Positions 1-42,400 of a DNA stretch of 64,000 nt are shown in pieces (positions within the stretch are counted from its first letter, which is position 1; each line of letters begins with the position of its first letter). The stretch lies in the NCBI GenBank assembly GCA_965235115.1, contig OZ249437.1, forward strand, positions 22,072,001 to 22,136,000, in the 5' to 3' direction. This stretch comes from Laetmonice hystrix. Taxonomy: Eukaryota. The position numbers and the translations under genes are program-made. Below the pieces are notes generated by a model. That model was not told the DNA's origin, ran no database searches, and saw only the letters and a program-made list of their open reading frames with translations.

Positions 1-34
1 ACTAGGACAGGGAGTATGGATGTGCCTGGCGTAC

Positions 35-415
35 CTTGATTATCTCGTGACATTCCTCCTTGGAGATGAAGCCGTTCTCGTCGATGTCGTACATGTTGAA
101 GGCCCACTCGAGTCGCTGGGTCGGTGAGCCCCGTGCTGTCACACTGAGGGCACACATGAACTCCCGGAAGTCCAACTTGTGGTTCCGGTCCTTGTCAAAG
201 GTCCGAAAGACGTGCTCTGCGAACATGGTGGCGTCTCCGTTGGGGAAGTGTTGGATGTAGATGTCCTTGAACTGGTCAATGTCGAGTTGACCGTCCGGGT
301 GATCCCGGTACCAGGACTGGTACCAGGTGCGGAGTTCTGCCTCCGAGAAGTTGGTCGATTCTAGAAGATTAAACATGGCCTCTGGCCGCAGCTTGCCCGA
401 CGGGTTGTTCCCCAT
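35..415 (-). CDS. Neuronal calcium sensor (neurocalcin/hippocalcin-like EF-hand protein), first coding exon; the gene continues beyond the left edge
   Basis: ORF MGNNPSGKLRPE...FDKDRNHKLDFREF...AFNMYDIDENGFISKEE..EIIK resembles the NCS family: MGxxxS myristoylation motif plus EF2 and EF3 loops. GT donor AAG|GTACGC at 34/33; acceptor ttttttcag upstream at ~438. Confidence 0.9.
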
Positions 416-1664
416 AGTCTAAATGTGCGTCTCCTCTCTGAAAAAATGACGTCAAGACGTCACAATAGATCCCCAACCGCGCATGCTCGTACTCTAGAGA
501 TCCTGCTGGTATTGTGGGAAGTGAAATCGTGTTCCAACAATGCGCTGGTGCATACCGAAGAGATAGAAATGCAGTGAAGAGCCAAGGAAATAGTCCAGCA
601 AAGTAGTTTGCATTTGAACTGTTTCAAGTCGAATTATAGAGACATTTAAATCTTTAAGAAAAATTAAATGAAGTGAAAACAACCTCTGATAATGTACCTA
701 ATTATAATTATTTTGTGAGTAGTAGTTAACTGCTCGTAGGTGTCTATCTTCACCCCCACCCTCCACATGGCGTCATTGCTGTGTAGACTGGTTCACGATC
801 CCGTCGCCAGGTGTCTAGAACCTAGCGACGGGATTGGGAACCAGTCCAGCCATGTGTGGCCATTGCTAGTATTGTGGGGACCTCTATAGTGTGAGGCCGG
901 GAGATACGACCCCCCCCCCCCCCTCCCCCCACCATGCCGCCTGCAGTATTCATGCATGGGTGCATCAAGGGGACTCGCATACACTGGGGGATACAGCATT
1001 TCTCAGATCGAATTTCAACGAGGGGGTGCAGATACATTTTCAGCTATTTTTCTTTTATTGGCTGGGATCCCTGAAGGGGGTTGTTTGCATCATACAGACC
1101 CCGTTTCAATTTTTCAGAGATGACACGAGTTACAAGAAGTTCTGTGTAGAGTCCATATAGGTTATTTATATTAAACATGAATATTTAACATGACCCATGT
1201 ATAGTATTGTTTTATTGTGTAGCAGTTCGGTGGCACACGCTATCATAAGGTCAGCTCTCCGTGATTTTTTTATATCTAGGTTCTCGGTCTATGCGCGGTT
1301 CGACAAATGTAACGATGCCAGAACTAGAGAGAGAGAGAGGACCCAGTGTTATGTATGCCTGTAACATCTATACTCCGGCTACAACCTGTTCAATGGGAGC
1401 ATGCTCCGTTATGTTGATATCATCAGGGATTTTTGTTGTTGTTACCGTTATTAAAACGACATGATAATATTTTCACTTACCTTCCTTGTCCGAGACTGTC
1501 ACTTCTCCTGACCGCGGGCCTGTCTTGTATTTGGTTCGAGGTGTAGGGCCTACTCACACCCCCAGGTTTCGAGGGTCAGTCTATCGTTATCGCCGACACT
1601 AGGTGACGCGCCACAACCCGGTCATTCCCCGTGGCAGCGTTCCACAAATTTGGAGGCCAGGGAT

Positions 1665-2372
1665 ATGGTTGTGGGCACGGCTCAGGGTAGGGTTGTGGGC
1701 ACGGCTCAGGGTAGGGTTGTGGGCACGGCTCAGGGTATGGTTGTGAGCACGGCTCAGGGTATAGGGTTGTGGGCACGGCTCAGGGTAGGGTTGTGGGCAC
1801 GGCTCAGGGTATGGTTGTGGGCACGGCTCAGGGTATAGGGTTGTGGGCACGGCTCAGGGTAGGGTTGTGGGCACGGCTCAGTGTAGGGTTGTGGGCACGG
1901 CTCACGGTAGGGTTGTGGGCACGGCTCATGGTATGGTTGTGGGCACGGCTCAGGGTATGGTTGTGAGCACGGCTCAGGGTATAGGGTTGTGGGCACGGCT
2001 CAGGGTAGGACTGTGGGCACGGCTCAGGGTAGGGTTGTGGGCACGGCTCAGGGTATAGGGTTGTGGGCACGGCTCAGGGTAGGACTGTGGGCACGGCTCA
2101 GGGTAGGGTTGTGGGCACGGCTCAGGGTAGGGTTGTGGGCACGGCTCAGGGTAGGGTTGTGGGCACGGCTCAGGGTATGGTTGTGGGCACGGCTCAGGGT
2201 ATGGTTGTGGGCACGGCTCACGGTAGGGTTGTGGGCACGGCTCAGGGTAGGGTTGTGGGCACGGCTCAGGGTAGGGTTGTGGGCACGGCTCAGGGCAGGG
2301 TTGTGGGCACGGCTCAGGGCAGGGTTGTGGGCACGGCTCAGGGCAGGGTTGTGAGCACGGCTCAGGGTAGGG
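1665..2372. repeat. 24/26-bp minisatellite (GGGTTGTGGGCACGGCTCAGGGTA)
   Basis: About 29 near-identical units. Confidence 0.95.
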
Positions 2373-3141
2373 GCAAGTTTCGACGAGAGGACGTGGGGCC
2401 GAGGTTAGAGGGGTTAGCGAAGGTTTGGGGTTAGAAATATTAATTCGATTGTTTGGTTCTGCTACTGAAATTCACGGAATGCTACCATGGGTGACCGTTA
2501 TCATACCTTATCTTGCAGGCACAGGCCTGTATCAGAGGATGTATAGGTCACTACTTACCGTAAATAATTTACAACCATTTGCAAGTAATGTACGTAATTT
2601 ATATGCCTTCACATTTTTGTTATTATTAATCATCTTTACCCATGAAGAAAGAACTTAGAAAGAACTTGGCATATTTAGGCTAATTAGGACATTATCTTCC
2701 CTTGTAATTACCGGTTACCTGTAGCCGTCCGAACTGAATTTATGCAGGTCTGATGGGCATATAGGGGCCGATTGGGCGACTCGTGAAATCTTGTTCCGCA
2801 TGGTGGCAGCACCGTCGTACCGGTCCTCGCTCCAGTAACGTAAGATTCGACAGGACGACGAAATGTCAAGCTGGGTCCGGATGCGTGACAACTTTTTGTT
2901 ATGGAAAATGACAGTGGCAGATGCACCCTAACAAATTGTCTTCTGCTTGTCCATGGAGGCTGCATCCTCCGCCCCTTGACGGAAGAGAGCCTTCAAAAGT
3001 GTTTTTTCTAGAATTTTGGGAAATGTCGGGTAATTTTGTAGGAAAACTCTGAACGTGCATAGAATATCTACGATCTACAATAAGACCCCTTGGTACGAGG
3101 GTGCATCGGTGACACACGCAAACACTTTCAGTTTTCCAAAT

Positions 3142-3454
3142 GTGATACTTTATTACCAGCGATTTTTAAAAGTACCACCATACACATAAATACTTTTACA
3201 TATGTGATACTTTGTTACTGGCAGTTTTCAAAAGTACTACCATACATATAAACACGTTCACATATATGTGGTACTTTGTTAGGCCTACTAGCAGTTTTTA
3301 TGAAGTAACAAAATAAAACATAGGCCTATGTGAAAGTATTTATGTGTATGGTGGTACTTTTAAAAACTTAACAAAATGTTTATGTGTATGGTGGTACTTT
3401 TAAAAACTGCCAGTAACAAAGTATCACTTATGTGTGTGGTGGTACTTTTAAAAA
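3142..3454. repeat. AT-rich foldback of tandem ~60-bp units in inverted orientation
   Basis: TTTTTAAAAGTACCACCATACACATAAATAC in the left arm; GTATTTATGTGTATGGTGGTACTTTTAAAAA in the right arm. Confidence 0.7.
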
Positions 3455-3640
3455 GGCGGAGGGATGTGAAAGTACCGACTTTGAGATCATACTCAGCCCA
3501 GGCGGCCTCAGCCAAAAAGTGACCTCCACGCCCCAGTGCCCCCTACCGCCAGTGGTACAACGACAACCCGGTGCAAACTTTGACCTCAACCCAGATGGAA
3601 ACTAGGCCTAGCTTCCTCGTGCGGCTGGGTCTCGTGCTGT

Positions 3641-4095
3641 ATGGATCCAAGCACAGGCACAGAGACAGACTCAGGAGTTGGTGAGTGTTTCTGAGTCTCC
3701 TGGCCTAGTGCTGTATGGATCCATGCACAGGCCCAGAGACAGACTCAGTAGTTGGTGAGTGTTTCTGAGTCTCCTGGCCTAGTGCTGTATGGATCCATGC
3801 ACAGGCACAGAGACAGACTCAGTAGTTGGTGAGTGTTTCTGAGTCTCCTGGCCTAGTGCTGTATGGATCCATGCACAGGCACAGAGACAGACTCAGGAGT
3901 TGGTGAGTGTTTCTGAGTCTCCTGGCCTAGTGCTGTATGGATCCATGCACAGGCCCAGAGACAGACTCAGTAGTTGGTGAGTGTTTCTGAGTCTCCTGGC
4001 CTAGTGCCGTATGGATCAATGCACAGGCACAGAGACAGACTCAGTAGTTGGTGAGTGTTTCTGAGTCTCCTGGCCTAGTGCTGTATGGATCCATG
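3641..4095 (+). repeat. 74-bp minisatellite containing the ENPP start codon and first donor
   Basis: ATGGATC at 3641, 3715, 3789, 3863, 3937, 4011, 4085; each full unit has GTTG|GTGAGT. Confidence 0.95.
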
Positions 4096-7000
4096 AGTGT
4101 TTCTGGGTCTCGTGATCCAGTGATGTATGACACACTCAGTTGTTCTGGGTCTTGTGATCCAGTACTGTATGGCTCCACAGGCGCAGAGATACACTCAATA
4201 GTTGCTGGCGCGTGATGGTAGAGCGCTCTGTGAAGTCAAAGATTTGCTCAGGTGGTGAATGGGACAAACCGTGTGGTGTCCAGATTTCCTGATATAACAT
4301 AATTCCACAGAAAACGATCCGACAGGCAGAAACATAGTCTACCGAACCTTCGACATGGAGTCTACGAATCTTCTGGTGCGTATCAATTGTCAACTCTCCC
4401 GCACTGAGCGGGTGACACTCGCATTCAGCCTGTGGCAGGGCTGTCAACTCTCCCGCACTGAGCGGGTGACACCCGCATTCAGCCTGTAGCAGGGCTGTCA
4501 ACTCTCCCGCACTGAGCGGCTGACACCCGCATTCAGCCTGTGGCAGGGCTGTCAACTCTCCCGCACTGAGCGGCTGACACCCGCATTCAGCCTGTGGCAG
4601 GGCCATCAACTCTCCCGCACTGAGCGGGTGACACCCGCATTCAGCCTGTGGCAGGGCTGTCAACTCTCCCGCACTGAGCGGGTGACACCCGCATTCAGCC
4701 TGTGGCAGGGCTGTCAACTCTCCCGCACTGAGCGGGTGACACCCGCATTCAGCCTGTGGCAGGGCTGTCAACTCTCCCGCACTGAGCGGGTGACACCCGC
4801 ATTCAGCCTGTGGCAGGGCTGTCAACTCTCCCGCACTGAGCGGGTGACACCCGCATTCAGCACTAATCTCCCACCTGATGCGCTCACAAAATCTCCCGCA
4901 GAGTGAGCATGGAACCATAGACCTTATTTTGTGCTCCAAAATACACCAAATGTCGCCAAAATACACCGTAAATTTCACAATTTCCCGGGGAATGCCCCCA
5001 GACCCCCAAGCTATAGGCTTCATGCCTTCGATGCTCACGGCCTTTGGTTGCGCCTGCGCGCTCATGCACTGGCGGACCACATGTATAGGGGATGGGGCTA
5101 GGTGAGTGGGTGTCGCCCGCATTCGTGTTGACAGCCCTGTAGTAGGCCTACCATCACTGACAATTTCATAACACATAGGCCTATATAATAATAAAGATAT
5201 ATATATAATATATATGTACTCTATAACATATATTCAGGGGCCGACCCAGGTGATCTTGGGGGGGGGGGGGGGGTTAGGCGGGGCTAACGATCGGGCACGT
5301 AAAGCACCCAGCCATCGATACTTGGGCTCTCCGTGCTATTTAGGTCTAGCCTATTATATAACATTTTAGGGGTGGCCTCCCCCCCCCCCCCGCCCCCGGA
5401 TCCGCCAATGACATTGGACTTGGAAGTATATGCGTGCGGTCATTGGTGCCATTATAGGACCCCCGCTGTAGCTCACTAAGCGCTCCCGTGAGGTGACATG
5501 GGAAGATAAATAAGCAAAGGAAATTTCCCTACACGTGAACCCGCTGTTAAAGGAAACCACATAAATCATCGAAGTATAACTAATGTCGGCATTCTGCCAG
5601 TTATCTCAAGACCAACAACTGAGATTCAATTTAAATACTTCACATTCCTGTTGAACTGTTATATGTTTTGTGATCATGGGGAGGGCGGGGGGCCTTGGTG
5701 TTTTGACGGTGCCGTGTCAGACAGGGGCTATAGCCGTGTCAAGGTAAGCGCGGGTGCATGAGGGACGATCATTGTGCCTGCAGCTGGCCTGGGGAGCGGC
5801 AGGTGATCGTACAGGTGTTGTCTGGGTGTGGAGGATCTCCGGGTCTTTACGAATGTTTCCCGGGTGTGTAGGACCGACCCCGGGAGTAGGATCGACCCCA
5901 GGTGTGTAGGAGCGACCCCGGGTGTGTAGGATCAACTCCGGGTGTGTAGGATCGACCCCGGGTGTGTAGGGCCGACCCCGGGCGTGTAGGACCGACCCCG
6001 GGCGTGTAGGATCAACTCCGGGTGTGTAGGACTGACCCCGGGCGTGTAGGACCGACCCCGGGTGTGTATCGAAGTGATGAGGGCCGACTGAAGGATGGAG
6101 GTAGACCGACAGCTCGAGGCGGAACCCCTAGAACCAGAGGCCTTGCCGCCATGGGTCTGTATGTCACATAATGTGAGAGGTATAACATCTAGAAAAAAAT
6201 CTGGTTGTCAGAACTAAAAATCTAGTAGGCCTAGCTGTTCTGTCCCCAAAGTTACTCCTAACCTCGGTCCCCAAACTTACCCCTAATCTCGGTCCCCAAA
6301 CCTTTCCCTAACGTCTAACGCATAAATTCCAAGTCATGCCACCCCCCTTTTTGAAAAGTGTCGTACGGGAAGGGATATGTGGCTGCATGCGTGCACCCGT
6401 GCGCCCCCCCCCCCCACACACACACCGGTGATTCCGTACGTGTGAGTCAATGAATCCTACACCTGAAGCCAACTGACAAAAACTCTCATCAGAGTTGGTA
6501 TACTAGACCTATTTGTGGACAGAGACATGATTTTAATGGCGGCAGACTTGTGCCTCCGCCCCCCTGTCCAAGTGGGTTGACTTTGATGGACGGAACCTCA
6601 TGTCCTCAGATCTATTGTGTAGAGTGTAAATACGGGCTTACTATATCGGCGGGAATTGACCTAGAAATATGTCATTGAGAGGTCAAACGGGAGGAAGACG
6701 CGATCAAAGTCGGTCAAGGTGTCACTGTCGCCTCCCCAGACGGATCCTCTTTCTTGCAGTATATAAATCCAAGGTTTTTATTTGGTACATTGCACCAAAC
6801 TTATTGCGATTGTGAAACTCCTCAACCAGAAACACAGTGTGGTGTTTGAGAGCGTGGAGCGCCTACCGATAGGCTTTCTATAGGAGGCCATATTGAACAC
6901 AATGGCCCCTTTTTCTTATTTTTGAATCTCTCGGTGAAGTTCATTCTTCATGCCCCAAGAGGAATATATTCTGCTCTCAGGCACGGAGAAAATGCAAAAA

Positions 7001-10000
7001 ATGTGGAAGGTCTGATACAGTTTCTTGTCAGAAACGTGATACTTATCAAAGCAATGTTTGTTAGAGTTTTTAAAATCACATCAAAGCAGTGATCAGGGGC
7101 GCCGGAAGCAAATTATTATTGGGGGGGCAAGAGAGCTGAAGCGAAAGTCATAGGCTACAACATGCTTAGTAAAGCAGGATCGGAGGCCCTCCCCAAGAAA
7201 ATTTTAAAACCTACACACCTTAAAACGCTTTTCTACGCCATTTTGAGGCAGGATTTTTTATGTTTTGAAGGCGTAAATGAATAAATTACAATGTATCAAT
7301 GTATCATTAGGACAATCGACCCAGTCTTTGACGCACCCAAGTCATGGTTTCACCAGGCCTACTGCATGTGGAAAAACCTGCCTTTTTTTCATTCATGATC
7401 ACAGATTATTAGGGGGGGCGATGCCCCCCCCCCAACTAGATTATTGAGGGGGCGGTCGCCCCCCTGCCCCCCCCCCCGCTTCTGGCGCCTATGGCAGTGA
7501 TGCAGATATTCCATGGTTGAAGTGTTGCACCAACGGTTGTTAGTGATGCAGATATTCCATGGTTAAAGTGTTGAACCAACGGTTGTTAGTGATGCAGATA
7601 TTCCATGGTTAAAGTGTTGCACCAACGGTTGTTAGTGATGCAGATATTCCATGGTTAAAGTGTTGCACCAACGGTTGTTAGTGATGCAGATATTCCATGG
7701 TTAAAGTGTTGAACCAACGGTTGTTAGTGATGGAGATATTCCATGGTTAAAGTGTTGCACCAACGGTTGTTAGTGATGCAGATATTCCATGGTTAAAGTG
7801 TTGCACCAACGGTTGTTAATGATGCAGATATTCCATGGTTAAAGTGTTGCACCAACGGTTGTTAGTGATGCAGATATTCTAGGGTTAAAAATCAGACTGG
7901 GGTTTATTTTAAGGGAGTTCAATCATTCTATTTCGTGTGCAATACTTGTTGACCGGTATCCTGACTCTGACAGTAAGAAAAAGGGAGACATAGGTCAGCC
8001 ATATTGACAGCTAACAGCTCAATTCACTTGAATATTTTTTGGACTGTTTCAGGGCTACAAGAAACCGTCAGTATGTTCAACAAAACGAATCATTATCGCC
8101 GTCGTGATCATCGCAGTAAGTACCTTTTGTTATTATGATATGTACCGTTTATATAAACGTTGGGTACCATGTCTGCTGTAGCAGTGCATGGGTTGACTGA
8201 CTGACGTTGGGTTTACCATGTCTGCTGTAGCAGTGCATGGATTGACTGACTGACGTTAGGTTTACCATGTCTGCTGTAGCAGTGCATGGGTTGACTGACT
8301 GACGTTGGGTACCATGTCTGCTGTAGCAGTGCATGGATTGACTGACTGACGTTGGGTTTACCATGTCTGCTGTAGCAGTGCATGGATTGACTGACTGACG
8401 TTAGGTTTACCATGTCTGCTGTAGCAGTGCATGGGTTGACTGACTGACGTTGGGTACCATGTCTGCTGTAGCAGTGCATGGATTGACTGGCTGACGTTAG
8501 GTTTACCATGTCTGCTGTAGCAGTGCATGGATTGACTGACTGACGTTGGGTACCATGTCTGCTGTAGCAGTGCATGGATTGACTGACTGACGTTAGGTTT
8601 ACCATGTCTGCTGTAGCAGTGCATGGGTTGACTGACTGACGTTGGGTACCATGTCTGCTGTAGCAGTGCATGGATTGACTGGCTGACGTTAGGTTTACCA
8701 TGTCTGCTGTAGCAGTGCATGGATTGACTGACTGACGTTGGGTACCATGTCTGCTGTAGCAGTGTATGGATTGACTGACTGACGTTGGGTTTACCATGTC
8801 TGCTGTAGCAGTGTATGGATTGACTGACTGACAATGGGTACCATGTCTGCTGTAGCAGTGCATGGATTGACTGACTGACGTTGGGTTTACCATGTCTGCT
8901 GTAGCAGTGCATGGATTGACTGACTGACGTTGGGTTTACCATGTCTGCTGTAGCAGTGCATGGATTGACTGGCTGACGTTGGGTTTACCATGTCTACTGT
9001 AGCAGTGCATGGATTGACTGACTGACGTTGGGTTTACCATGTCTGCTGTAGCAGTGCATGGCTTGACTGACTGACGTTGGGTTTACCATGTCTACTGTAG
9101 CAGTGCATGGATTGATTGACTGACGTTGGGTACCATGTCTGCTGTAGCAGTGCATGGATTGACTGACTGACGTTGGGTTTACCATGTCTGCTGTAGCAGT
9201 GCATGGATTGACTGACTGACGTTGGGTTTACCATGCCTGCTGTAGCAGTGCATGGATTGACTGACTGACGTTGGGTTTACCATGTCTGCTGTAGCAGTGC
9301 ATGGATTGACTGGCTGACGTTGGGTTTACCATGCCTGCTGTAGCAGTGCATGGATTAACTGACTGACGTTGGGTTTACCATGTCTGCTGTAGCAGTGCAT
9401 GGATTGACTGGCTGACGTTGGGTTTACCATGCCTGCTGTAGCAGTGCATGGATTAACTGACTGACGTTGGGTTTACCATGTCTGCTGTAGCAGTGCATGG
9501 CTTGACTGACTGACGTTGGGTTTACCATGTCTACTGTAGCAGTGCATGGATTGACTGACTGACGTTGGGTTAACCATGTCTGCTGTAGCAGTGCATGGAT
9601 TGATTGACTGACGTTGGGTTTACCATGTCTGCTGTAGCAGTGCACGGATTGACTTGGTGACGTTGGATTTTGTCTTGTAGCAGAGATTGATTTACCAGTA
9701 CATTGAATGATTAGCTGACTGTGGTCTTGTCCCTGCAGGTGGTGATCCTGATCCTCGGACTCGCACTGGGATTAGGTTTAAAGAAATCGCCACCAGTTAA
9801 CACGGAAGGCTGTAAACCGTTCCCCAAATCAGAACCAACGAGGGCCAGAACGAAAGGGGAGACCTGGCTCAAACAAGACTGCAGCATTGGCGACAAACCA
9901 GAATGTCCTGCGGGGTTCGTAGGTTACTTATAGTTGTACATATCTCTATCAGAGAGTCATCAGGTCGTTGTAATCGATTATACATATCTCTATCAGAGAG

Positions 10001-13000
10001 TCATCAGGTCGTTCTAATCGATTATACATATCTCTATCAGAGAGTCATCAAGTCGTTCTAATCGATTATAGTGGCATCTTGTCAAAACTTAGCTGTGGCG
10101 TGTCAAATCTAAAGTGTTCCCCAATCATATTAGGGTGGTCTAAATGAGATCCATCCCCAATCATATTAGGGTGGTCTAAATGAGATCCATCCCCAATCAT
10201 ATTAGGGTGGTCTAAATGAGACCCATCCCCAATCATATTAGGATGGTCTAAATGAGATCCATCCCCAATCATATTAGGGTGGTCTAAATGAGATCCATCC
10301 CCAATCATATTAGGATGGTCTAAATGAGATCCATCCCCAATCAAATTGGGTTTGTCTTAATAAGTTCCACCCCAATTAGAATGAGATGGTGACCTGAGTG
10401 TTATATTGTGAACCTAGTTGTATGATCAGTACGTGTGCATGTTTCAGATATTCAAAGCCACCGTTACTGATCATATCGATGGATGGGTTTCGTGCTAACT
10501 ACATGGACCGTAACCTGACCCCTGTTTTAGAGAAGATCGCCGAGTGCGGAGTTCATCCTGAGTACATGAGGCCAGCGTTTCCCAGCAAAACCTTCCCTAA
10601 TCATTACAGCATCGTCACGGTAATTAATTGATATATCCCTAATCGTTACAGCATCGTCACGGTAATTAATTGATATATCCCTAATCGTTACAGCATCGTC
10701 ACGGTAATTAATTGATATATCCCTAATCGTTACAGCATCGTCACGGTAATTAATTGATATATCCCTAATCGTTACAGCATCGTCACGGTAATTAATTGAT
10801 ATATCCCTAATCGTTACAGCATCGTCACGGTAATTAATTGATATATTCCTAATCGTTACAGCATCGTCACGGTAATTAATTGATATATCCCTAATCGTTA
10901 CAGCATCGTCACGGTAATTAATTGATATATTCCTAATCGTTACAGCATCGTCAAGGTAATTAATTGATATATCCCTAATCGTTACAGCATCGTCACGGTA
11001 ATTAATTGATATATTCCTAATCGTTACAGCAGCGTCATATTGACAACTCGATGTTTGTCTCTGCAAGGTTTGTCTCATTGACAACTCGATGTTTGTCTCT
11101 GCAAGGTTTGTCTCATTGACAACTCGATGTTTGTCTCTGCAAGGTTTGTCTCATTGACAACATGATGTTTGTCTATGCAGGGGTTGTCTCATTAACAACA
11201 TGATGTTTGTCTATGCAGGGGTTGTCTCATTGACAACATGATGTTTGTCTATGCAGGGGTTGTCTCATTGACAACATGATGTTTGTCTATGCTGGGGTTG
11301 TCTCATTGACAACATGATGTTTGTCTATGCAGGGGTTGTCTCATTGACAACATGATGTTTGTCTATGCAGGGGTTGTCTCATTGACAACATGATGTTTGT
11401 CTATGCAGGGGTTGTCTCATTGACAACATGATGTTTGTCTATGCAGGGGTTGTCTCATTGACAACATGATGTTTGTCTATGCAGGGGTTGTCTCATTGAC
11501 AACATGATGTTTGTCTATGCAGGGTTTGTCTCATTGACAACATGATGTTTGTCTATGCAGGGGTTGTCTCATTGACAACATGATGTTTGTCTATGCAGGG
11601 GTTGTCTCATTGACAACATGATGTTTGTCTATGCAGGGGTTGTCTCATTGACAACATGATGTTTGTCTATGCATGGGGTTGTCTCATTGACAACATGATG
11701 TTTGTCTATGCAGGGGTTGTCTCATTGACAACATGATGTTTGTCTATGCAGGGGTTGTCTCTTTGACAACATGATGTTTGTCTATGCAGGGGTTGTTTCA
11801 TTGACAACATGATGTTTGTCTATGCAGGGGTTGTCTCATTGACAACATGATGTTTGTCTCTGCAAGGTTTGTATCATTGACAACATGATGTTTGTCTATG
11901 CAGGGGTTGTCTCATTGACAACATGATGTTTGTCTATGCAGGGGTTGTCTCATTGACAACATGATGTTTGTCTATGCAGGGGTTGTCTTATTGACAACAT
12001 GATGTTTGTCTATGCAGGGGTTGTCTCATTGACAACATGATGTTTGTCTATGCAGGGGTTGTCTCATTGACAACATGATGTTTGTCTATGCAGGGGTTGT
12101 CTCATTGACAACATGATGTTTGTCTATGCAGGGGTTGTCTCATTGACAACATGATGTTTGTCTATGCAGGGGTTGTCTCATTGACAACATGATGTTTGTC
12201 TATGCAGGGATTGTCTCATTGACAACATGATGTTTGTCTATGCAGGGGTTGTCTCATTGACAACATGATGTTTGTCTATGCAGGGGTTGTCTCATTGACA
12301 ACATGATGTTTGTCTATGCTGGGGTTGTCTCATTGACAACATGATGTTTGTCTATGCTGGGGTTGTCTCATTGACAACATGATGTTTGTCTATGCAGGGA
12401 TTGTCTCATTGACAACATGATGTTTGTCTATGCAGGGGTTGTCTCATTGACAACATGATGTTTGTCTATGCAGGGGTTGTCTCATTGACAACATGATGTT
12501 TGTCTATGCAGGGGTTGTCTCATTGACAACATGATGTTTGTCTATGCAGGGATTGTCTCATTGACAACATGATGTTTGTCTATGCAGGGGTTGTCTCATT
12601 GACAACATGATGTTTGTCTATGCAGGGGTTGTCTCATTGACAACATGATGTTTGTCTATGCAGGGGTTGTCTCATTGACAACATGATGTTTGTCTCTGCA
12701 AGGTTTGTCTCATTGACAACATGATGTTTGTCTATGCAGGGGTTCTCTCATTGACAACATGATGTTTGTCTATGCAGGGTTTGTATCCCGTATCACACAA
12801 TCTCAGTGACAACATGATGTTTGTCTATGCAGGGGTTGTATCCCGAATCGCACGGTATCATTGACAACTTAATGTACGACATGGAGATCGACGAAGTGTT
12901 CACATTGGGTGGAGATTCCAAGTTTGATCCCCGCTGGTGGCACGGTGAACCGGTGAGTATCTAAGTTTGATGCCCGCTGGTGGCACGGTGAACCGGTGAG

Positions 13001-39400: not shown

Positions 39401-42400
39401 ATCAGTGACCATGAGGGTTTGATCTGTGTGAAGTACAGGTGTAACGCAGGGTATCACCTTGTTTTGGTCCTGAACCTTGGTCCAATGTTGGTGATGGAGT
39501 GTTCTGGAGGAAGATGAGAGGCACCTGTCTCTGTGAACAGAGCTGTACAAAGTGAGAACCCTTGGTAGCTGCGTCACCAGTGATAGGGCCATTATTGGCA
39601 ACAATACCAACCAGGTTCCTGAAAACACAAAACATGGTTCTACAGGTCTCACTAGGTTTACAACAACTGAAAAATATGGGAGCTTATCTCACTCGTAATA
39701 TGGAAGGTTATCTCTCTGGTAATATAGGTTATCTCTCTGGCAATATAGGTTATCTCTCTGGTAATATAGGTTATCTCTCTGGTAATATAGGTTATCTCTC
39801 CGGTAATATAGGTTATCTCTCCGGTAATATAGGTTATCTCTCTGGTAATATAGGTTATCTCCCTGGTAATATAGGTTATCTCTCTGGTAATATAGGTTAT
39901 CTCTCTGGTAATATAGGTTATCTCTCTGGTAATATAGGTTATCTCTCTGGTAATTTGATGACTGCTTGGCCCAGATTGGGTATCAGCCATCTTTTAATCT
40001 AAAAGAACAAAATCTTACCCTTCAATGTGGGCAAAACCTGTTATCAATGTTGGGCCATAGCGTGCTTTGAACTCTTGAAAACAGCTTTCATCAACAATAC
40101 GTGATATAACCTACAAGATACCAAATTGTATTCAAATAATTTTTCCTGCAAGACAACAACACCTTTTGATTCTTCACAATCTTCTTTAAATATTGATAAA
40201 TAAAAAAACCTATCAAGAATCTTTTGAAGCTTAGCTGTCTATCATAATGCTATATAATATTTTCATAGATCCAATATATTTGGGAGGCTGCCTTGTGTTG
40301 ATTGTGACCCGCCTTGTACATATCCATGGTCTCCTGGTGTTTGGCGGGAATCAAGCCACACAAGTCCTCCGGGTCATAAACAGGTTCGGAGTAGTCCTCC
40401 TCTGACTCCACTATGGGCATGTTGAAAGTTTCCACGATGTTACGACTCAGCGTGAAGGCTTCCATCTCAGTCTTAGCAAAGTGGTCTGTTGCCCCACTGA
40501 CACTGTAAAATCAGAGGTAGCATCCTTTAAAAATCTGCTCTCCAGCAGTCTGCAATAACTTTTTGTTCACTTTCAAAACCGACTTTTCCTTCTTTGCTAT
40601 TGTTTGTGGGATTGCTAGATATACTAGTGAGACAAGTTGTTATTAACTGATTTGAAAAACGTTCTTTGCTTTCCTTCGATTATACTACAGAGTGAAAACA
40701 AAGATGACTGATTGAGCTCTAACCTACAATGAAGATTGGCACCACCCAAGTCCTCAGCACTGACCACTTCTCCCAAGGCAGCATAAACAAGTGGTGGACC
40801 ACCCAGGAAGATGGTTCCCACACGGTCAACAATGACTGTCTCTTGACACATGGTGGGGACGTATGCCCCACCCGCAGTACAGCTACCACACACGATGGCT
40901 ACCTGTGGTCCACCAAACAACATTACCGGTATATTAGAAAATTCTATTATAACACAAATCTTGGATATTTCTAATGTCTTTTTCTCCAGCCACCAAAAGC
41001 ACTTCGTTGTAAAATGTCTTACCTGAGGAATGTTCATTGAATTGAGAATAGCTTCATTGTAAAATGCACGCCCACCCTGTTCCTTGTCTGGGAATATGTC
41101 GGCCTGTGGATATTGAAAGAACATTAATTAAAACATGATCTCAGAGGAACTAAACACCATCAGGATTTATAGGTCACTGTAGCAAGACTTCACCAAGAGT
41201 AAAAGAAAAGTCATACAATTTGTTAAAGTTGAAAATTCTTTTGAGAGTATCACTAATAAAAATATGATGGTCACTATAATGTACAAAATGTCCATTGGTG
41301 GATCGAGAGGTCCTCAGGGGCATACCCTCCCTTAATTTTATTTTGCTTATCTTTGGACCCTTGAAAAGGAGCCTAAAAACATTTTTCCTTATGCATGGTG
41401 GATGCACCCCCACCTTGACTTTGTAATGACCTTACCTGCAAGGGGAGGAAGGCACCACCACTGTCGACAATATAAATGCAGGGCAGCTGGTTTTTCATGG
41501 CAATCTCCTGGGCCCGCAACTGTTTTTTGACAGACACAGGATAAATTGTCCCACCCTTTACAGTGGCATCATTGATGAGTAATGTACAGTAACGTCCTTC
41601 TACCTTTCCGATACCTGTAATTAACAATCATCATTGATGAGTAATGTACAGTAACGTCCTTCTACCTGTCCGATACCTGTAATTAACAATCATCATTGAT
41701 GAGTAATGTACAGTAACATCCTTCTACCTGTCCGACACCTGTAATTAACAATCATCATTGATGAGTAATGTACAGTAACGTCCTTCTACCTTTCCGACAC
41801 CTGTAATTAACAATCATCATTGATGAGTAATGTACAGTAACGTCCTTCTACCTGTCCGATACCTGTAATTAACAATCATCATTGATGAGTAATGTACAGT
41901 AACATCCTTCTACCTGTCCGATACCTGTAATTAACAATCATCGTTGATGAGTAATGTACAGTAACGTCCTTCTACCTTTCCGACACCTGTAATTAACAAT
42001 CATCATTGACGAGTAATGTACAGTAACGTCCTTCTACCTGTCCGATACCCAGCTGCCGATACCTGTAATTAACAATAACACAGTGAAGTCTGGACCAGAT
42101 ACAGGCATTCCAGTGGAAGTGAATGTCACTGTAAGACTTATGTCGTTATGGTAGTCCCTCCCTTCCCTAAGCAGTATATGAAAAAGTCATATGGATCAGT
42201 GGACAGAAAATTCACATGAAAAATGAGGATCAAATCCTGACTGATGAGTGCTCCTTAATTTGGTTGGTGTCCAGAGTTAAATATTGATTTAATCAATCCT
42301 CACCTGTTTTCACTTCAACTTTTCGAAACAAACATCATGAGTGACAGATACTGAGATGGGCCTACTTCTTACATTTTGTAAGTAGTTCGTGAAAAGGTCA

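What the first reader, a model, noticed from the sequence alone, without database searches (positions are those of the whole stretch)
8053..33918. One polypeptide with two complete ENPP catalytic+nuclease-like modules
Seen: the last NUC1 exon (21773-21990) has no stop. It runs from [12 protein letters not shown] into [19 protein letters not shown], which mirrors the pre-PDE1 linker [18 protein letters not shown]. It ends in a phase-2 donor only 273 nt before the PDE2 exon ([15 protein letters not shown]), with no signal/TM exon between. Paired exons have identical lengths in the two halves (172, 120, 76, 109, 67, 88, 81, 130 nt), showing an old intragenic duplication with heavily diverged sequence. 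Established: vertebrate ENPP1-3 have one PDE, one NUC and SMB domains. Inference: a two-headed ectoenzyme that could act as a covalent pseudo-dimer, or handle two substrates or steps of extracellular nucleotide or cyclic-dinucleotide breakdown.
Basis: partly seen in the sequence, partly recalled or inferred. Interest (0 to 1): 0.85.

Follow-up and report, generated by a model that had tools for sequence, protein, structure and literature searches.

The report
Two-headed ENPP ectoenzyme gene, transcribed
This is one real, expressed gene for a membrane-anchored enzyme that carries two complete, apparently active copies of the ENPP1/3-type extracellular nucleotide-cleaving unit on a single chain. 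It belongs to a widespread but unstudied family of 2- to 4-headed ENPPs in molluscs, annelids and their relatives.

Summary
I curated 34 exons (8053-33918, + strand) that join into one open frame of 1529 codons. The exon at 21773-21990 has no stop. It fuses the tail of the first nuclease-like domain to a second pre-PDE linker and splices over a 273-nt intron into the second PDE module.

A 2711-nt spliced contig in run X3 carries this 21990/22264 joint together with three neighbouring joints. The N gap (28773-29217) lies inside intron 25, and the flanking exons join without a gap against transcript-derived orthologues.

Both modules keep the Thr nucleophile, all seven zinc ligands, Asn277, the aromatic clamp, the ENPP1/3 insertion loop and 14 conserved cysteines. 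There are no SMB domains. The initiator exon lies upstream of 8053 and was not found.

The architecture is not unique. Predicted proteins and full-length transcript contigs with 2 to 4 such modules occur in many molluscs and annelids and in a priapulid, nearly all with intact active sites. Two 5-kb transcripts from other species are colinear with this gene, module by module.

I found no paper describing the family. The gene is real and moderately interesting. Its function is inferred, not tested.

The parts
8053..8115 (+). Model exon 1 (not the initiator). Encodes the cytosolic residues [12 protein letters not shown] and the start of the membrane anchor (IIIAVVIIA).
   Evidence: AG acceptor and GTAAGT donor, phase 0. 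Only this frame joins exon 2 without a stop. The TM aligns with the P0184 N-terminus.
9739..9914 (+). Exon 2. Encodes the rest of the TM helix, a short stalk and L1 linker 1 (TWLKQDC...ECPAG). There are no SMB domains.
   Evidence: Linker Cys align with ENPP1 C195/C203.
10448..10619 (+). Exon 3 (172 nt), start of PDE1. Carries the metal ligand D92 and the nucleophile T128 (codon 10590-10592).
   Evidence: Pfam Phosphodiest, E 2e-20. Residue mapping.
12833..12952 (+). Exon 4 (120 nt), PDE1. Carries N149 (= ENPP1 N277).
13266..13341 (+). Exon 5 (76 nt), PDE1. Carries W194 and E198 (= ENPP1 W322 and D326).
14131..14300 (+). Exon 6 (170 nt), PDE1. Holds the insertion loop, F211 (= Y340), D247 and H251.
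14603..14711 (+). Exon 7 (109 nt), PDE1. Carries D294 and H295.
15951..16097 (+). Exon 8 (147 nt), PDE1.
   Evidence: Colinear with orthologues.
16265..16430 (+). Exon 9 (166 nt), PDE1.
16679..16745 (+). Exon 10 (67 nt), PDE1. Carries H412 (= ENPP1 H535).
16960..17047 (+). Exon 11 (88 nt), end of PDE1.
17650..17837 (+). Exon 12 (188 nt). Encodes the L2 lasso linker of module 1.
18091..18291 (+). Exon 13 (201 nt), nuclease-like domain 1.
18861..18993 (+). Exon 14 (133 nt), NUC1.
19245..19325 (+). Exon 15 (81 nt), NUC1.
19575..19704 (+). Exon 16 (130 nt), NUC1. Holds the EF-hand-like DFDHNGLYD.
   Evidence: The loose end of the X3 contig before 20969 matches this exon's 3' end.
20969..21122 (+). 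Exon 17 (154 nt), NUC1.
   Evidence: RNA joint 21122>21773 in the X3 contig.
21773..21990 (+). Exon 18 (218 nt), the junction exon. Encodes the NUC1 tail with no stop, fused to L1 linker 2 (SWLDGAEC...NCPAG).
   Evidence: RNA joints on both sides. The same kind of junction occurs in orthologues and in mollusc proteins.
21991..22263 (+). Intron 18 (273 nt, GT..AG). Read-through would give GGG TAA. It holds no leader or TM exon.
   Evidence: X3 depth is 0 at 22066-22171. DNA contigs of X1, X2 and X4 are continuous across it.
22264..22435 (+). Exon 19 (172 nt), start of PDE2. Carries D832 and the nucleophile T868 (codon 22406-22408).
   Evidence: Pfam Phosphodiest, E 8e-20. RNA joints. Mapping.
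22995..23114 (+). Exon 20 (120 nt), PDE2. Carries N889.
   Evidence: RNA joints..
23893..23968 (+). Exon 21 (76 nt), PDE2. Carries W934 and D938.
   Evidence: RNA joint 23114>23893. The contig then continues into the sequence of exon 22.
25830..26002 (+). Exon 22 (173 nt), PDE2. Holds the insertion loop, Y952, D988 and H992.
   Evidence: The X3 loose end after 23969 matches this exon's start..
26509..26617 (+). Exon 23 (109 nt), PDE2. Carries D1035 and H1036.
26839..27000 (+). Exon 24 (162 nt), PDE2.
28571..28724 (+). Exon 25 (154 nt), PDE2. Has a GTAAGT donor with two nt left over.
28773..29217 (.). Assembly gap (445 N). It lies inside intron 25 (28725-29395), not in coding sequence.
   Evidence: N run. 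The flanking exons are phase-compatible and join without a gap against orthologues. It was not filled or looked up.
29396..29462 (+). Exon 26 (67 nt), PDE2. Carries H1153.
29719..29806 (+). Exon 27 (88 nt), end of PDE2.
30119..30300 (+). Exon 28 (182 nt). Encodes the L2 linker of module 2.
30422..30628 (+). Exon 29 (207 nt), NUC2. Its last ~90 nt plus the donor are repeated about 7 times in the following intron.
32127..32244 (+). Exon 30 (118 nt), NUC2.
32439..32519 (+). Exon 31 (81 nt), NUC2.
32786..32915 (+). Exon 32 (130 nt), NUC2. Holds the EF-hand-like DYDADGKAD.
33081..33222 (+). Exon 33 (142 nt), NUC2. Has a GC donor (CAG|GCAAGT).
33769..33918 (+). Exon 34, the NUC2 tail. The stop codon TGA is at 33916-33918.
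33919..34650 (+). Probable 3' UTR. Poly(A)-signal hexamers lie at 34598 and 34646.
   Evidence: hexamers. The cDNA-like run X3 holds 79% of the sampled words of 33769-34650.

Best explanation
**What it is.** A single expressed gene encodes a type II membrane protein. It has a short cytosolic tail, one N-terminal anchor helix and a ~50-residue stalk without SMB domains. Its extracellular part is two complete ENPP1/3-type units in series.

**What each unit contains.** Each unit is self-contained: an L1 linker with two cysteines, a two-zinc phosphodiesterase domain with a Thr nucleophile, an L2 lasso linker and a catalytically inert nuclease-like support domain.

**How it arose.** The units were joined by an ancient in-frame fusion. 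The last coding exon of unit 1 lost its stop and gained the linker-coding 3' part of the TM/linker exon.

**What it most likely does (inferred).** Both heads hydrolyse phosphodiester or pyrophosphate bonds of extracellular nucleotides such as ATP, NAD, ApnA and possibly cyclic dinucleotides, as ENPP1 and ENPP3 do. The two heads are long diverged and are separately conserved between species, so they probably differ in substrate preference or kinetics.

**Shown versus inferred.** The gene structure, the splicing of the junction, the conservation of active-site residues and the orthology of the modules are shown. Enzyme activity, substrates, topology and any cooperation between the heads are inferred.
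For: - **Junction RNA.** A spliced 2711-nt contig in the exon-only run X3 crosses 21990>22264 plus three neighbouring GT..AG joints. It extends 1682 nt further into module 1 and 288 nt further into module 2.
- **Open frame.** The 34 exons give one 1529-codon frame without a stop.
- **Colinearity.** The model is colinear, with no indel over 7 aa, with uninterrupted transcript ORFs P0185 (L001, 5017 nt) and P0184 (L002, 5152 nt) at 43-45% identity. Both carry in-frame stops upstream of their ATG.
- **Pfam.** Both 172-nt exons hit Phosphodiest.
- **Active sites.** Both modules hold the equivalents of ENPP1 D218, T256, F257, N277, W322, D376, H380, D423, H424 and H535. Module 1 has E for D326 (as ENPP3 does) and F for Y340.
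- **Substrate class.** The insertion loop that separates nucleotide-cleaving ENPP1/3 from lysoPLD-type ENPP2 has full length in both modules (positions).
- **Cysteines.** In each module, 14 Cys align with ENPP1/3 cysteines from C195 onward, including both linker Cys.
- **Linker.** The inter-module linker aligns with the ENPP3 segment just before its PDE domain in solved structures.
- **Module orthology.** Module 2 groups with module 2 of Dimorphilus and the two transcript species (SH-aLRT 98). Module 1 groups with their module 1 (91-93).
- **Expressed allele.** Over the laid stretch it differs from the window by four synonymous and two conservative exonic changes.
Against: - No enzyme assay exists for any multi-module ENPP.
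- X3 is not on record as RNA. Its cDNA nature is inferred from exon-only cover and GT..AG joints.
- Only 5 of the 33 exon joins have RNA support here. The rest rest on splice signals, frame and homology.
- The initiator exon was not found.
- Contigs cannot exclude additional isoforms, for example retention of intron 18, which would end the frame at CPAG-stop, or an internal promoter.
- Single NUC exons gave no Pfam hit, and the junction exon alone gave no significant PDB match. NUC identity rests on whole-module alignment to ENPP1/3 at 36-39% and on orthologues carrying PF01223.
Confidence: 0.9

Rival explanations
1. These are two neighbouring single-module ENPP genes made by tandem gene duplication. 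The observed joint is an occasional read-through (conjoined) transcript, and the normal products are two separate proteins.
For: - Tandem duplicates would also share exon lengths and phases.
- In at least one predicted 'two-module' protein, from Caenorhabditis auriculariae, a TM-like segment sits between the modules, so some database fusions are probably merged neighbours.
Against: - Exon 18 has no stop and no downstream poly(A) evidence.
- Module 2 has no initiator, signal or TM exon in the 273-nt intron.
- The junction exon itself encodes both the NUC tail and the L1 linker.
- X3 shows no cover inside intron 18.
- The same fused junction stands in uninterrupted ORFs of transcript contigs from two other species and in many mollusc proteins.
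Confidence: 0.03
2. It is one polypeptide, but only one head is catalytically relevant. The other serves as a scaffold, a binding module or a pseudo-enzyme.
For: - Degenerate heads exist in relatives. Octopus modules 1 and 2 and Dreissena module 2 have lost several metal ligands.
- Module 1 here has Y340F and D326E, and module 2 has Ala at the ENPP1 K295 position.
Against: - All seven metal ligands, the Thr nucleophile and N277 are intact in both modules here and in both modules of all three closest orthologues.
- E at position 326 is the ENPP3 state, and F at position 340 keeps the aromatic clamp.
Confidence: 0.1
3. The tandem arrangement is an assembly artefact, such as a mis-join or duplicated haplotig around the gap or the repeats.
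For: - The region holds an N gap and many minisatellites.
- All DNA runs come from one sample, possibly the one that was assembled.
Against: - The modules are only about 41% identical, so they are not haplotigs.
- DNA contigs of X1, X2 and X4 bridge exon 18, intron 18 and exon 19 continuously.
- The RNA contig joins the modules.
- Orthologues share the order.
- The gap lies far from the junction, inside an intron.
Confidence: 0.01

Closest known systems
Vertebrate ENPP3 and ENPP1, and snake-venom phosphodiesterase (PDB 6c01/9nir, 6wet/4gtw, 5gz4)
   Same: - Each module is 36-39% identical to human-type ENPP1 and ENPP3 across L1 linker, PDE, L2 and the NUC-like domain.
- These are the best solved-structure matches of the orthologue's modules (E 1e-103 to 1e-106).
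- Shared features: two-zinc site, Thr nucleophile, N277, aromatic clamp, insertion loop, disulfide cysteines and a type II anchor.
   Different: - Two modules sit on one chain instead of one.
- There are no somatomedin-B domains.
- Vertebrate ENPP1 and ENPP3 form homodimers of single-module chains (established knowledge), whereas here two diverged heads are covalently linked.
Multi-module ENPP proteins of Mollusca and Annelida, present in databases only (for example Magallana gigas LOC105325428, Mizuhopecten OWF35917, Dreissena LOC127876504, Haliotis and Littorina with four modules, Dimorphilus DgyrCDS1695)
   Same: - They have the same concatenation of whole L1-PDE-L2-NUC units, with a 15-25-residue junction of the form NUC tail (...LW...) followed by W-x-D..C..C.
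- Catalytic residues are intact in nearly every module.
- Dimorphilus and two transcript species match this gene module by module.
   Different: - Mollusc proteins have 3 or 4 modules, and their modules form their own clade in the tree. Whether the fusion arose once or several times is open.
- None is characterised. Their names are automatic ('uncharacterized protein', 'ENPP3', 'venom phosphodiesterase 2-like').
Somatic angiotensin-converting enzyme and carboxypeptidase D (analogy from established knowledge, not tested here)
   Same: They are membrane ectoenzymes in which an internal tandem duplication put two (ACE) or three (CPD) homologous catalytic domains on one chain, with diverged specificities.
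   Different: They have unrelated folds and chemistry. ACE is a type I membrane protein.
Dreissena polymorpha plasma ENPP induced by poly I:C (PMC7148315)
   Same: It is a bivalve ENPP with PDE and DNA/RNA nuclease domains, found in plasma and raised 4.6-fold after poly I:C. This is a lead for an immune or nucleic-acid-related role of such enzymes in spiralians.
   Different: The paper does not say whether its protein is the multi-module one. Identity with LOC127876504 was not tested.

Membership tests
ENPP1-3 subfamily (ectonucleotide pyrophosphatase/phosphodiesterase with a NUC-like domain) | Phosphodiest (PF01663) catalytic domain | tested here: met
   Both 172-nt exons hit PF01663 at E about 1e-20. 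Both whole modules align to ENPP1/3.
ENPP1-3 subfamily (ectonucleotide pyrophosphatase/phosphodiesterase with a NUC-like domain) | Two-metal site and Thr nucleophile (ENPP1 D218, T256, D376, H380, D423, H424, H535) plus N277 | tested here: met
   All are present in module 1 (D92, T128, N149, D247, H251, D294, H295, H412) and in module 2 (D832, T868, N889, D988, H992, D1035, H1036, H1153).
ENPP1-3 subfamily (ectonucleotide pyrophosphatase/phosphodiesterase with a NUC-like domain) | C-terminal nuclease-like (Endonuclease_NS-like) domain after an L2 linker | tested here: met
   - Single exons gave no Pfam hit.
- The modules align to ENPP1/3 through their C-termini, including the NUC cysteines and the EF-hand-like DxDxxGxxD.
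- Orthologues P0184 and P0185 carry PF01223.
ENPP1-3 subfamily (ectonucleotide pyrophosphatase/phosphodiesterase with a NUC-like domain) | L1 linker with two cysteines immediately before the PDE domain | tested here: met
   Both linkers have Cys aligned to ENPP1 C195/C203. The candidate partner cysteines aligned to C241 and C415 are present; this pairing is recalled from the ENPP2 disulfide map, not tested. The orthologue's inter-module linker aligns to the ENPP3 L1 segment.
ENPP1-3 subfamily (ectonucleotide pyrophosphatase/phosphodiesterase with a NUC-like domain) | Two N-terminal somatomedin-B domains (PF01033) | tested here: not met
   Nothing in the model aligns to ENPP1 residues 101-184, which hold the SMB cysteines. 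Exon 2 runs from the TM to the linker in about 50 residues. The missing initiator exon lies on the cytosolic side of the anchor. This gene is therefore ENPP1/3-like, like other invertebrate ENPPs, and not a strict orthologue of ENPP1, ENPP2 or ENPP3.
ENPP1-3 subfamily (ectonucleotide pyrophosphatase/phosphodiesterase with a NUC-like domain) | Nucleotide-type pocket (insertion loop present, unlike ENPP2/autotaxin) | tested here: met
   The W322-to-Y340 spacing is 18 residues in ENPP1, 17 in module 1 and 18 in module 2. That ENPP2 lacks this stretch is established knowledge.
ENPP1-3 subfamily (ectonucleotide pyrophosphatase/phosphodiesterase with a NUC-like domain) | Nucleotide pyrophosphatase/phosphodiesterase activity | not testable with these tools
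   This needs an enzyme assay.
Tandem multi-module ENPP of spiralians (database-only group) | Two or more complete L1-PDE-L2-NUC units in one reading frame, joined without a TM or signal segment | tested here: met
Tandem multi-module ENPP of spiralians (database-only group) | Module-by-module orthology with other members | tested here: met
   Module 1 groups with module 1, and module 2 with module 2, of Dimorphilus, P0184 and P0185. The relation to the mollusc modules is unresolved.

The most novel reading that the evidence does not exclude
Multi-headed ENPPs are a conserved protostome innovation. In this reading the 2 to 4 covalently linked, individually active heads have distinct substrate preferences, for example one for ATP, NAD or ApnA and another for cyclic dinucleotides such as 2'3'-cGAMP. 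Together they would form a single-chain extracellular nucleotide-processing device tied to purinergic or STING-type immune signalling. The poly I:C induction of a bivalve plasma ENPP hints at this.
Probability: 0.2. Interest if true: 0.7.

Novelty: new variant of a known kind. Interest (0 to 1): 0.45.

Why it matters
ENPP1 and ENPP3 control extracellular ATP, pyrophosphate and cGAMP in vertebrates, and they work as dimers of single-headed chains.

This gene is a transcript-supported example from a group of spiralian ENPPs that carry 2 to 4 heads on one chain. Almost every head in that group keeps a complete active site, which points to selection for multivalency or for division of labour between heads.

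The family is already in public databases under uninformative automatic names, and I found no paper that describes it. That makes it a ready natural system for three questions:
- what covalent linkage of ENPP heads achieves;
- how substrate specificity diverges after internal duplication;
- how invertebrates shape extracellular nucleotide and cyclic-dinucleotide signals.

It is not a new enzyme class, so the interest is moderate.

Tried and rejected
**Gene modelling**
- A first automatic exon chain scored on tblastn cover over-extended exons and threaded through repeated exon fragments. A second version with splice scoring still mis-set several boundaries. Both were replaced by a hand-curated model checked against the RNA joints and the orthologues.

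**Searches on single exons**
- The junction exon alone gave only chance hits against PDB sequences.
- Four NUC exons alone gave no Pfam family.

**Initiator exon**
- tblastn with orthologue N-termini and a scan for ATG-to-strong-donor segments in 415-8052 found nothing convincing. It remains unresolved.

**The window's own protein**
- It is not in the protein collections searched. The best relatives are 43-45% identical.

**Literature**
- Five searches found no paper on tandem or multi-module ENPPs: ENPP with 'two phosphodiesterase domains'; ectonucleotide pyrophosphatase with tandem, oyster and domain architecture; ENPP with Crassostrea; ENPP with Lophotrochozoa; and five LOC gene names.
- Subscription journals are not covered.

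**Structure prediction**
- I did not run it. Two modules exceed the 1200-residue limit, and truncated constructs would expose the native PDE-NUC interface and invite false docking. The tool also returns no inter-domain error map.
- No complex prediction was sent, because I make no binding claim.

**RNA evidence limits**
- The single read-laying run covered 20900-24050 only, so the other 28 exon joins have no direct RNA check.
- The second run search shows only that X3 holds 79% of the words of the last exon plus the 3' UTR.
Full report
**Observation**

The + strand between 8053 and 33918 holds ENPP-like open stretches in a repeated order. The sequence at 21600-22600 shows an acceptor ...tgtcag|GAACAA at 21773 and an open frame through ...[12 protein letters not shown]...[19 protein letters not shown]. 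The donor is GG|gtaaga at 21990, and after 273 nt an acceptor ttgcag|A at 22264 opens (G)[15 protein letters not shown]. Read through, the donor would give GGG TAA, so only the spliced form keeps the frame open. The 273-nt intron holds only trivial ATG frames of 19 aa or less, with no signal or TM character.

**RNA test**

Four runs from one sample hold the junction exon. I laid them on 20900-24050.
- X1, X2 and X4 cover exons and introns alike. They include a 704-nt contig continuous over 21733-22438, so they are genomic.
- X3 covers exons only. One 2711-nt contig carries four GT..AG joints: 21122>21773, 21990>22264, 22435>22995 and 23114>23893.
- X3 has zero depth inside intron 18. Its loose ends match the 3' end of exon 16 and the start of exon 22.
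- The contig runs 1682 nt further into module 1 and 288 nt further into module 2.

X3 is not on record as RNA. Its cDNA nature is my inference from this pattern. X3 also holds 79% of the sampled words of the last exon plus about 730 nt downstream.

**Gene model**

Two automatic chains were corrected by hand from the sequence. The result is 34 exons that join into 4590 nt, or 1529 codons, with a single stop at the end. All splice sites are AG/GT except one GC donor, CAG|GCAAGT, at 33222.

Module 1 is exons 3-18 and module 2 is exons 19-34. Intron phases are identical in the two halves. Eight exon pairs have equal length (172, 120, 76, 109, 67, 88, 81, 130 nt), and the other seven differ by multiples of 3.

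Against the transcript-derived orthologues, the model shows no indel longer than 7 residues over 1495 aligned columns.

Position 8053 is an acceptor. The only frame that joins exon 2 is open from 8032 and has no ATG, so the initiator exon lies upstream. I could not find it.

**Assembly gap**

The 445 N at 28773-29217 lie in the intron between exon 25 (28571-28724, GTAAGT donor, two nt left over) and exon 26 (29396-29462, one leading nt). These exons correspond to the consecutive exons 9 and 10 of module 1. The joined peptide aligns without a gap to P0185, P0184 and Dimorphilus. No exon seems hidden in the gap.

**What the protein is**

- Both 172-nt exons hit Pfam Phosphodiest.
- The two modules are about 41% identical to each other (41.6%, 40.5%) and 36-39% identical to ENPP1 and ENPP3 over about 710 columns.
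- Mapped on ENPP1 numbering, both modules keep D218, T256, F257, N277, W322, D376, H380, D423, H424 and H535.
- Module 1 has E at position 326, as ENPP3 does, and F at 340. Module 2 has A at the K295 position.
- The stretch between W322 and Y340 is absent from autotaxin (established knowledge). It is full length in both modules, which points to nucleotide substrates rather than lysophospholipids.
- Fourteen cysteine columns per module match ENPP1/3 from C195 onward. Nothing matches the SMB cysteines.
- The N-terminus reads K-R, then 23 hydrophobic residues, then K-K. This is a type II anchor, as in ENPP1 and ENPP3.
- The best solved relatives of the orthologue's modules are snake-venom phosphodiesterase, ENPP3 and ENPP1. 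The inter-module linker aligns with the ENPP3 segment directly before the PDE domain.

The 'linker' is therefore an integral part of each PDE unit. The junction exon is a fusion of a stop-less last NUC exon with the linker-coding 3' part of the TM/linker exon.

**Relatives**

A search of 1.8 billion representatives with the 57-residue PDE2 exon ranked proteins with two or three matched stretches first. They and their relatives come from:
- scallops, oysters, mussels and clams (about 2200-2300 aa, three modules);
- Haliotis, Littorina and Mya (about 2950 aa, four modules);
- a chiton and an octopus;
- the annelids Dimorphilus, Helobdella and Owenia;
- Priapulus.

Most carry automatic names such as 'uncharacterized protein'.

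Every internal junction has the same form: a NUC tail, then W-x-D..C..C, then the PDE domain. Nearly all modules keep the full catalytic set. The exceptions are octopus modules 1 and 2 and Dreissena module 2.

Two Logan contigs, L001 (5017 nt) and L002 (5152 nt), carry uninterrupted two-module ORFs with upstream in-frame stops, so they are transcripts. They are colinear with this gene at 43-45% identity.

In a module tree, this gene's module 2 groups with module 2 of Dimorphilus and the two transcript species (98). Module 1 groups with their module 1 (91-93). The mollusc modules form a separate clade. The duplication therefore predates the split of these lineages. Whether molluscs and this lineage share one fusion event is open.

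At least one predicted 'fusion', from Caenorhabditis auriculariae, has a TM-like segment between its modules and is probably two merged genes.

The window's own protein is not in the collections searched. In this genome, only this locus on contig C2 shows two PDE starts in tandem.

**Mechanism**

Shown:
- one gene and a spliced junction;
- two complete units with intact active sites;
- module-wise orthology.

Inferred:
- a type II ectoenzyme with both heads outside the cell, each hydrolysing nucleotide phosphodiester or pyrophosphate bonds by the ENPP1/3 two-zinc, Thr mechanism;
- each nuclease-like domain acting as a structural support, as in ENPP1-3;
- a difference in substrate preference between the long-diverged, separately conserved heads.

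The pseudo-dimer idea is untested. I did not model it because two modules exceed the size limit and truncated constructs would mislead.

**Literature and novelty**

Five searches found no description of tandem ENPPs. A Dreissena study reports a plasma ENPP with PDE and nuclease domains raised 4.6-fold by poly I:C (PMC7148315). The vampire-snail ENPP5 is a different, short family member.

The architecture is thus common in databases but uncharacterised. This gene is a transcript-supported member of it. I rate it a new variant of a known kind, with moderate interest.

**Surroundings**

The neighbours are unrelated:
- an EF-hand (NCS-like) first exon at 2-415 on the minus strand;
- carboxyl-transferase exons near 40.6-41.1 kb on the minus strand.

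No further ENPP module lies elsewhere in the window.

**In passing**

Most introns of this gene hold minisatellites whose unit is the adjacent exon edge plus its splice site.

Noticed in passing
window 10594-11037, 11039-12784, 12920-13094, 13990-14179, 16874-16971, 19691-19928, 20271-20795, 23947-25645, 25986-26264, 27339-28557, 30542-31301: Most introns of the ENPP gene contain minisatellites (period 32-116 nt, up to 53 copies). Each unit is a copy of the neighbouring exon edge plus its splice site. Examples are 46 copies of the exon 4 acceptor, 53 copies of the exon 21 end plus GTAAGT donor, and 31 copies of the exon 25 acceptor. The RNA contig uses the exon-attached donor copy at exon 21 (23968). 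The scan note on AP1M1 intron 9 describes a similar case, so this may be a genome-wide property worth its own finding.
   Followed up: partly
window 30629-31376: About 7 tandem copies of the last ~90 nt of exon 29 with its donor. Several are open in frame and phase-compatible, and the automatic chain threaded through them. Use of a downstream copy would insert repeats of the [20 protein letters not shown]...TLGTQT segment. Whether this ever happens in RNA was not checked.
   Followed up: no
window 21979, 21982, 22327, 22356, 22402, 23928: All four runs, DNA and the cDNA-like X3, carry an allele that differs from the window. Across the six listed places there are four synonymous changes and two conservative ones (N816K in the inter-module linker, K851R). 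DNA contigs also differ at about 1.7% in intron 18. This is a second haplotype that keeps the frame.
   Followed up: partly
window 33223-33768; 19573-19574 and 32784-32785: There is a GC-AG intron (CAG|GCAAGT) after exon 33. Both 130-nt exons (16 and 32) use unusual AAG acceptors (gtaaag|, gaaaag|), a shared oddity of the two modules.
   Followed up: no
P0183 (Octopus sinensis) modules 1 and 2; P0002 (Dreissena polymorpha) module 2: These heads of three-module ENPPs have lost several metal ligands, and in octopus Thr is replaced by Ser. This suggests that some lineages turned heads into pseudo-enzymes.
   Followed up: partly
P0007 (Caenorhabditis auriculariae), residues ~780-805: A TM-like hydrophobic segment lies between the two predicted modules. 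This 'two-module' protein is probably two neighbouring genes merged by annotation. Database architectures need such a check before being counted.
   Followed up: partly
window 2-415 (-) and 40624-41124 (-): Neighbouring genes are an N-myristoylation-type EF-hand protein first exon (MGNNPSGKL..., neuronal calcium sensor-like) and carboxyl-transferase domain exons (MCCC2/PCCB-like). Both are unrelated to the ENPP gene.
   Followed up: partly
window 7277-7444 (+): An open frame starting MNKLQ... weakly recalls the MNKEK... start of orthologue P0184 (E = 12, not significant). It is a possible but unsupported candidate for the missing initiator exon.
   Followed up: no
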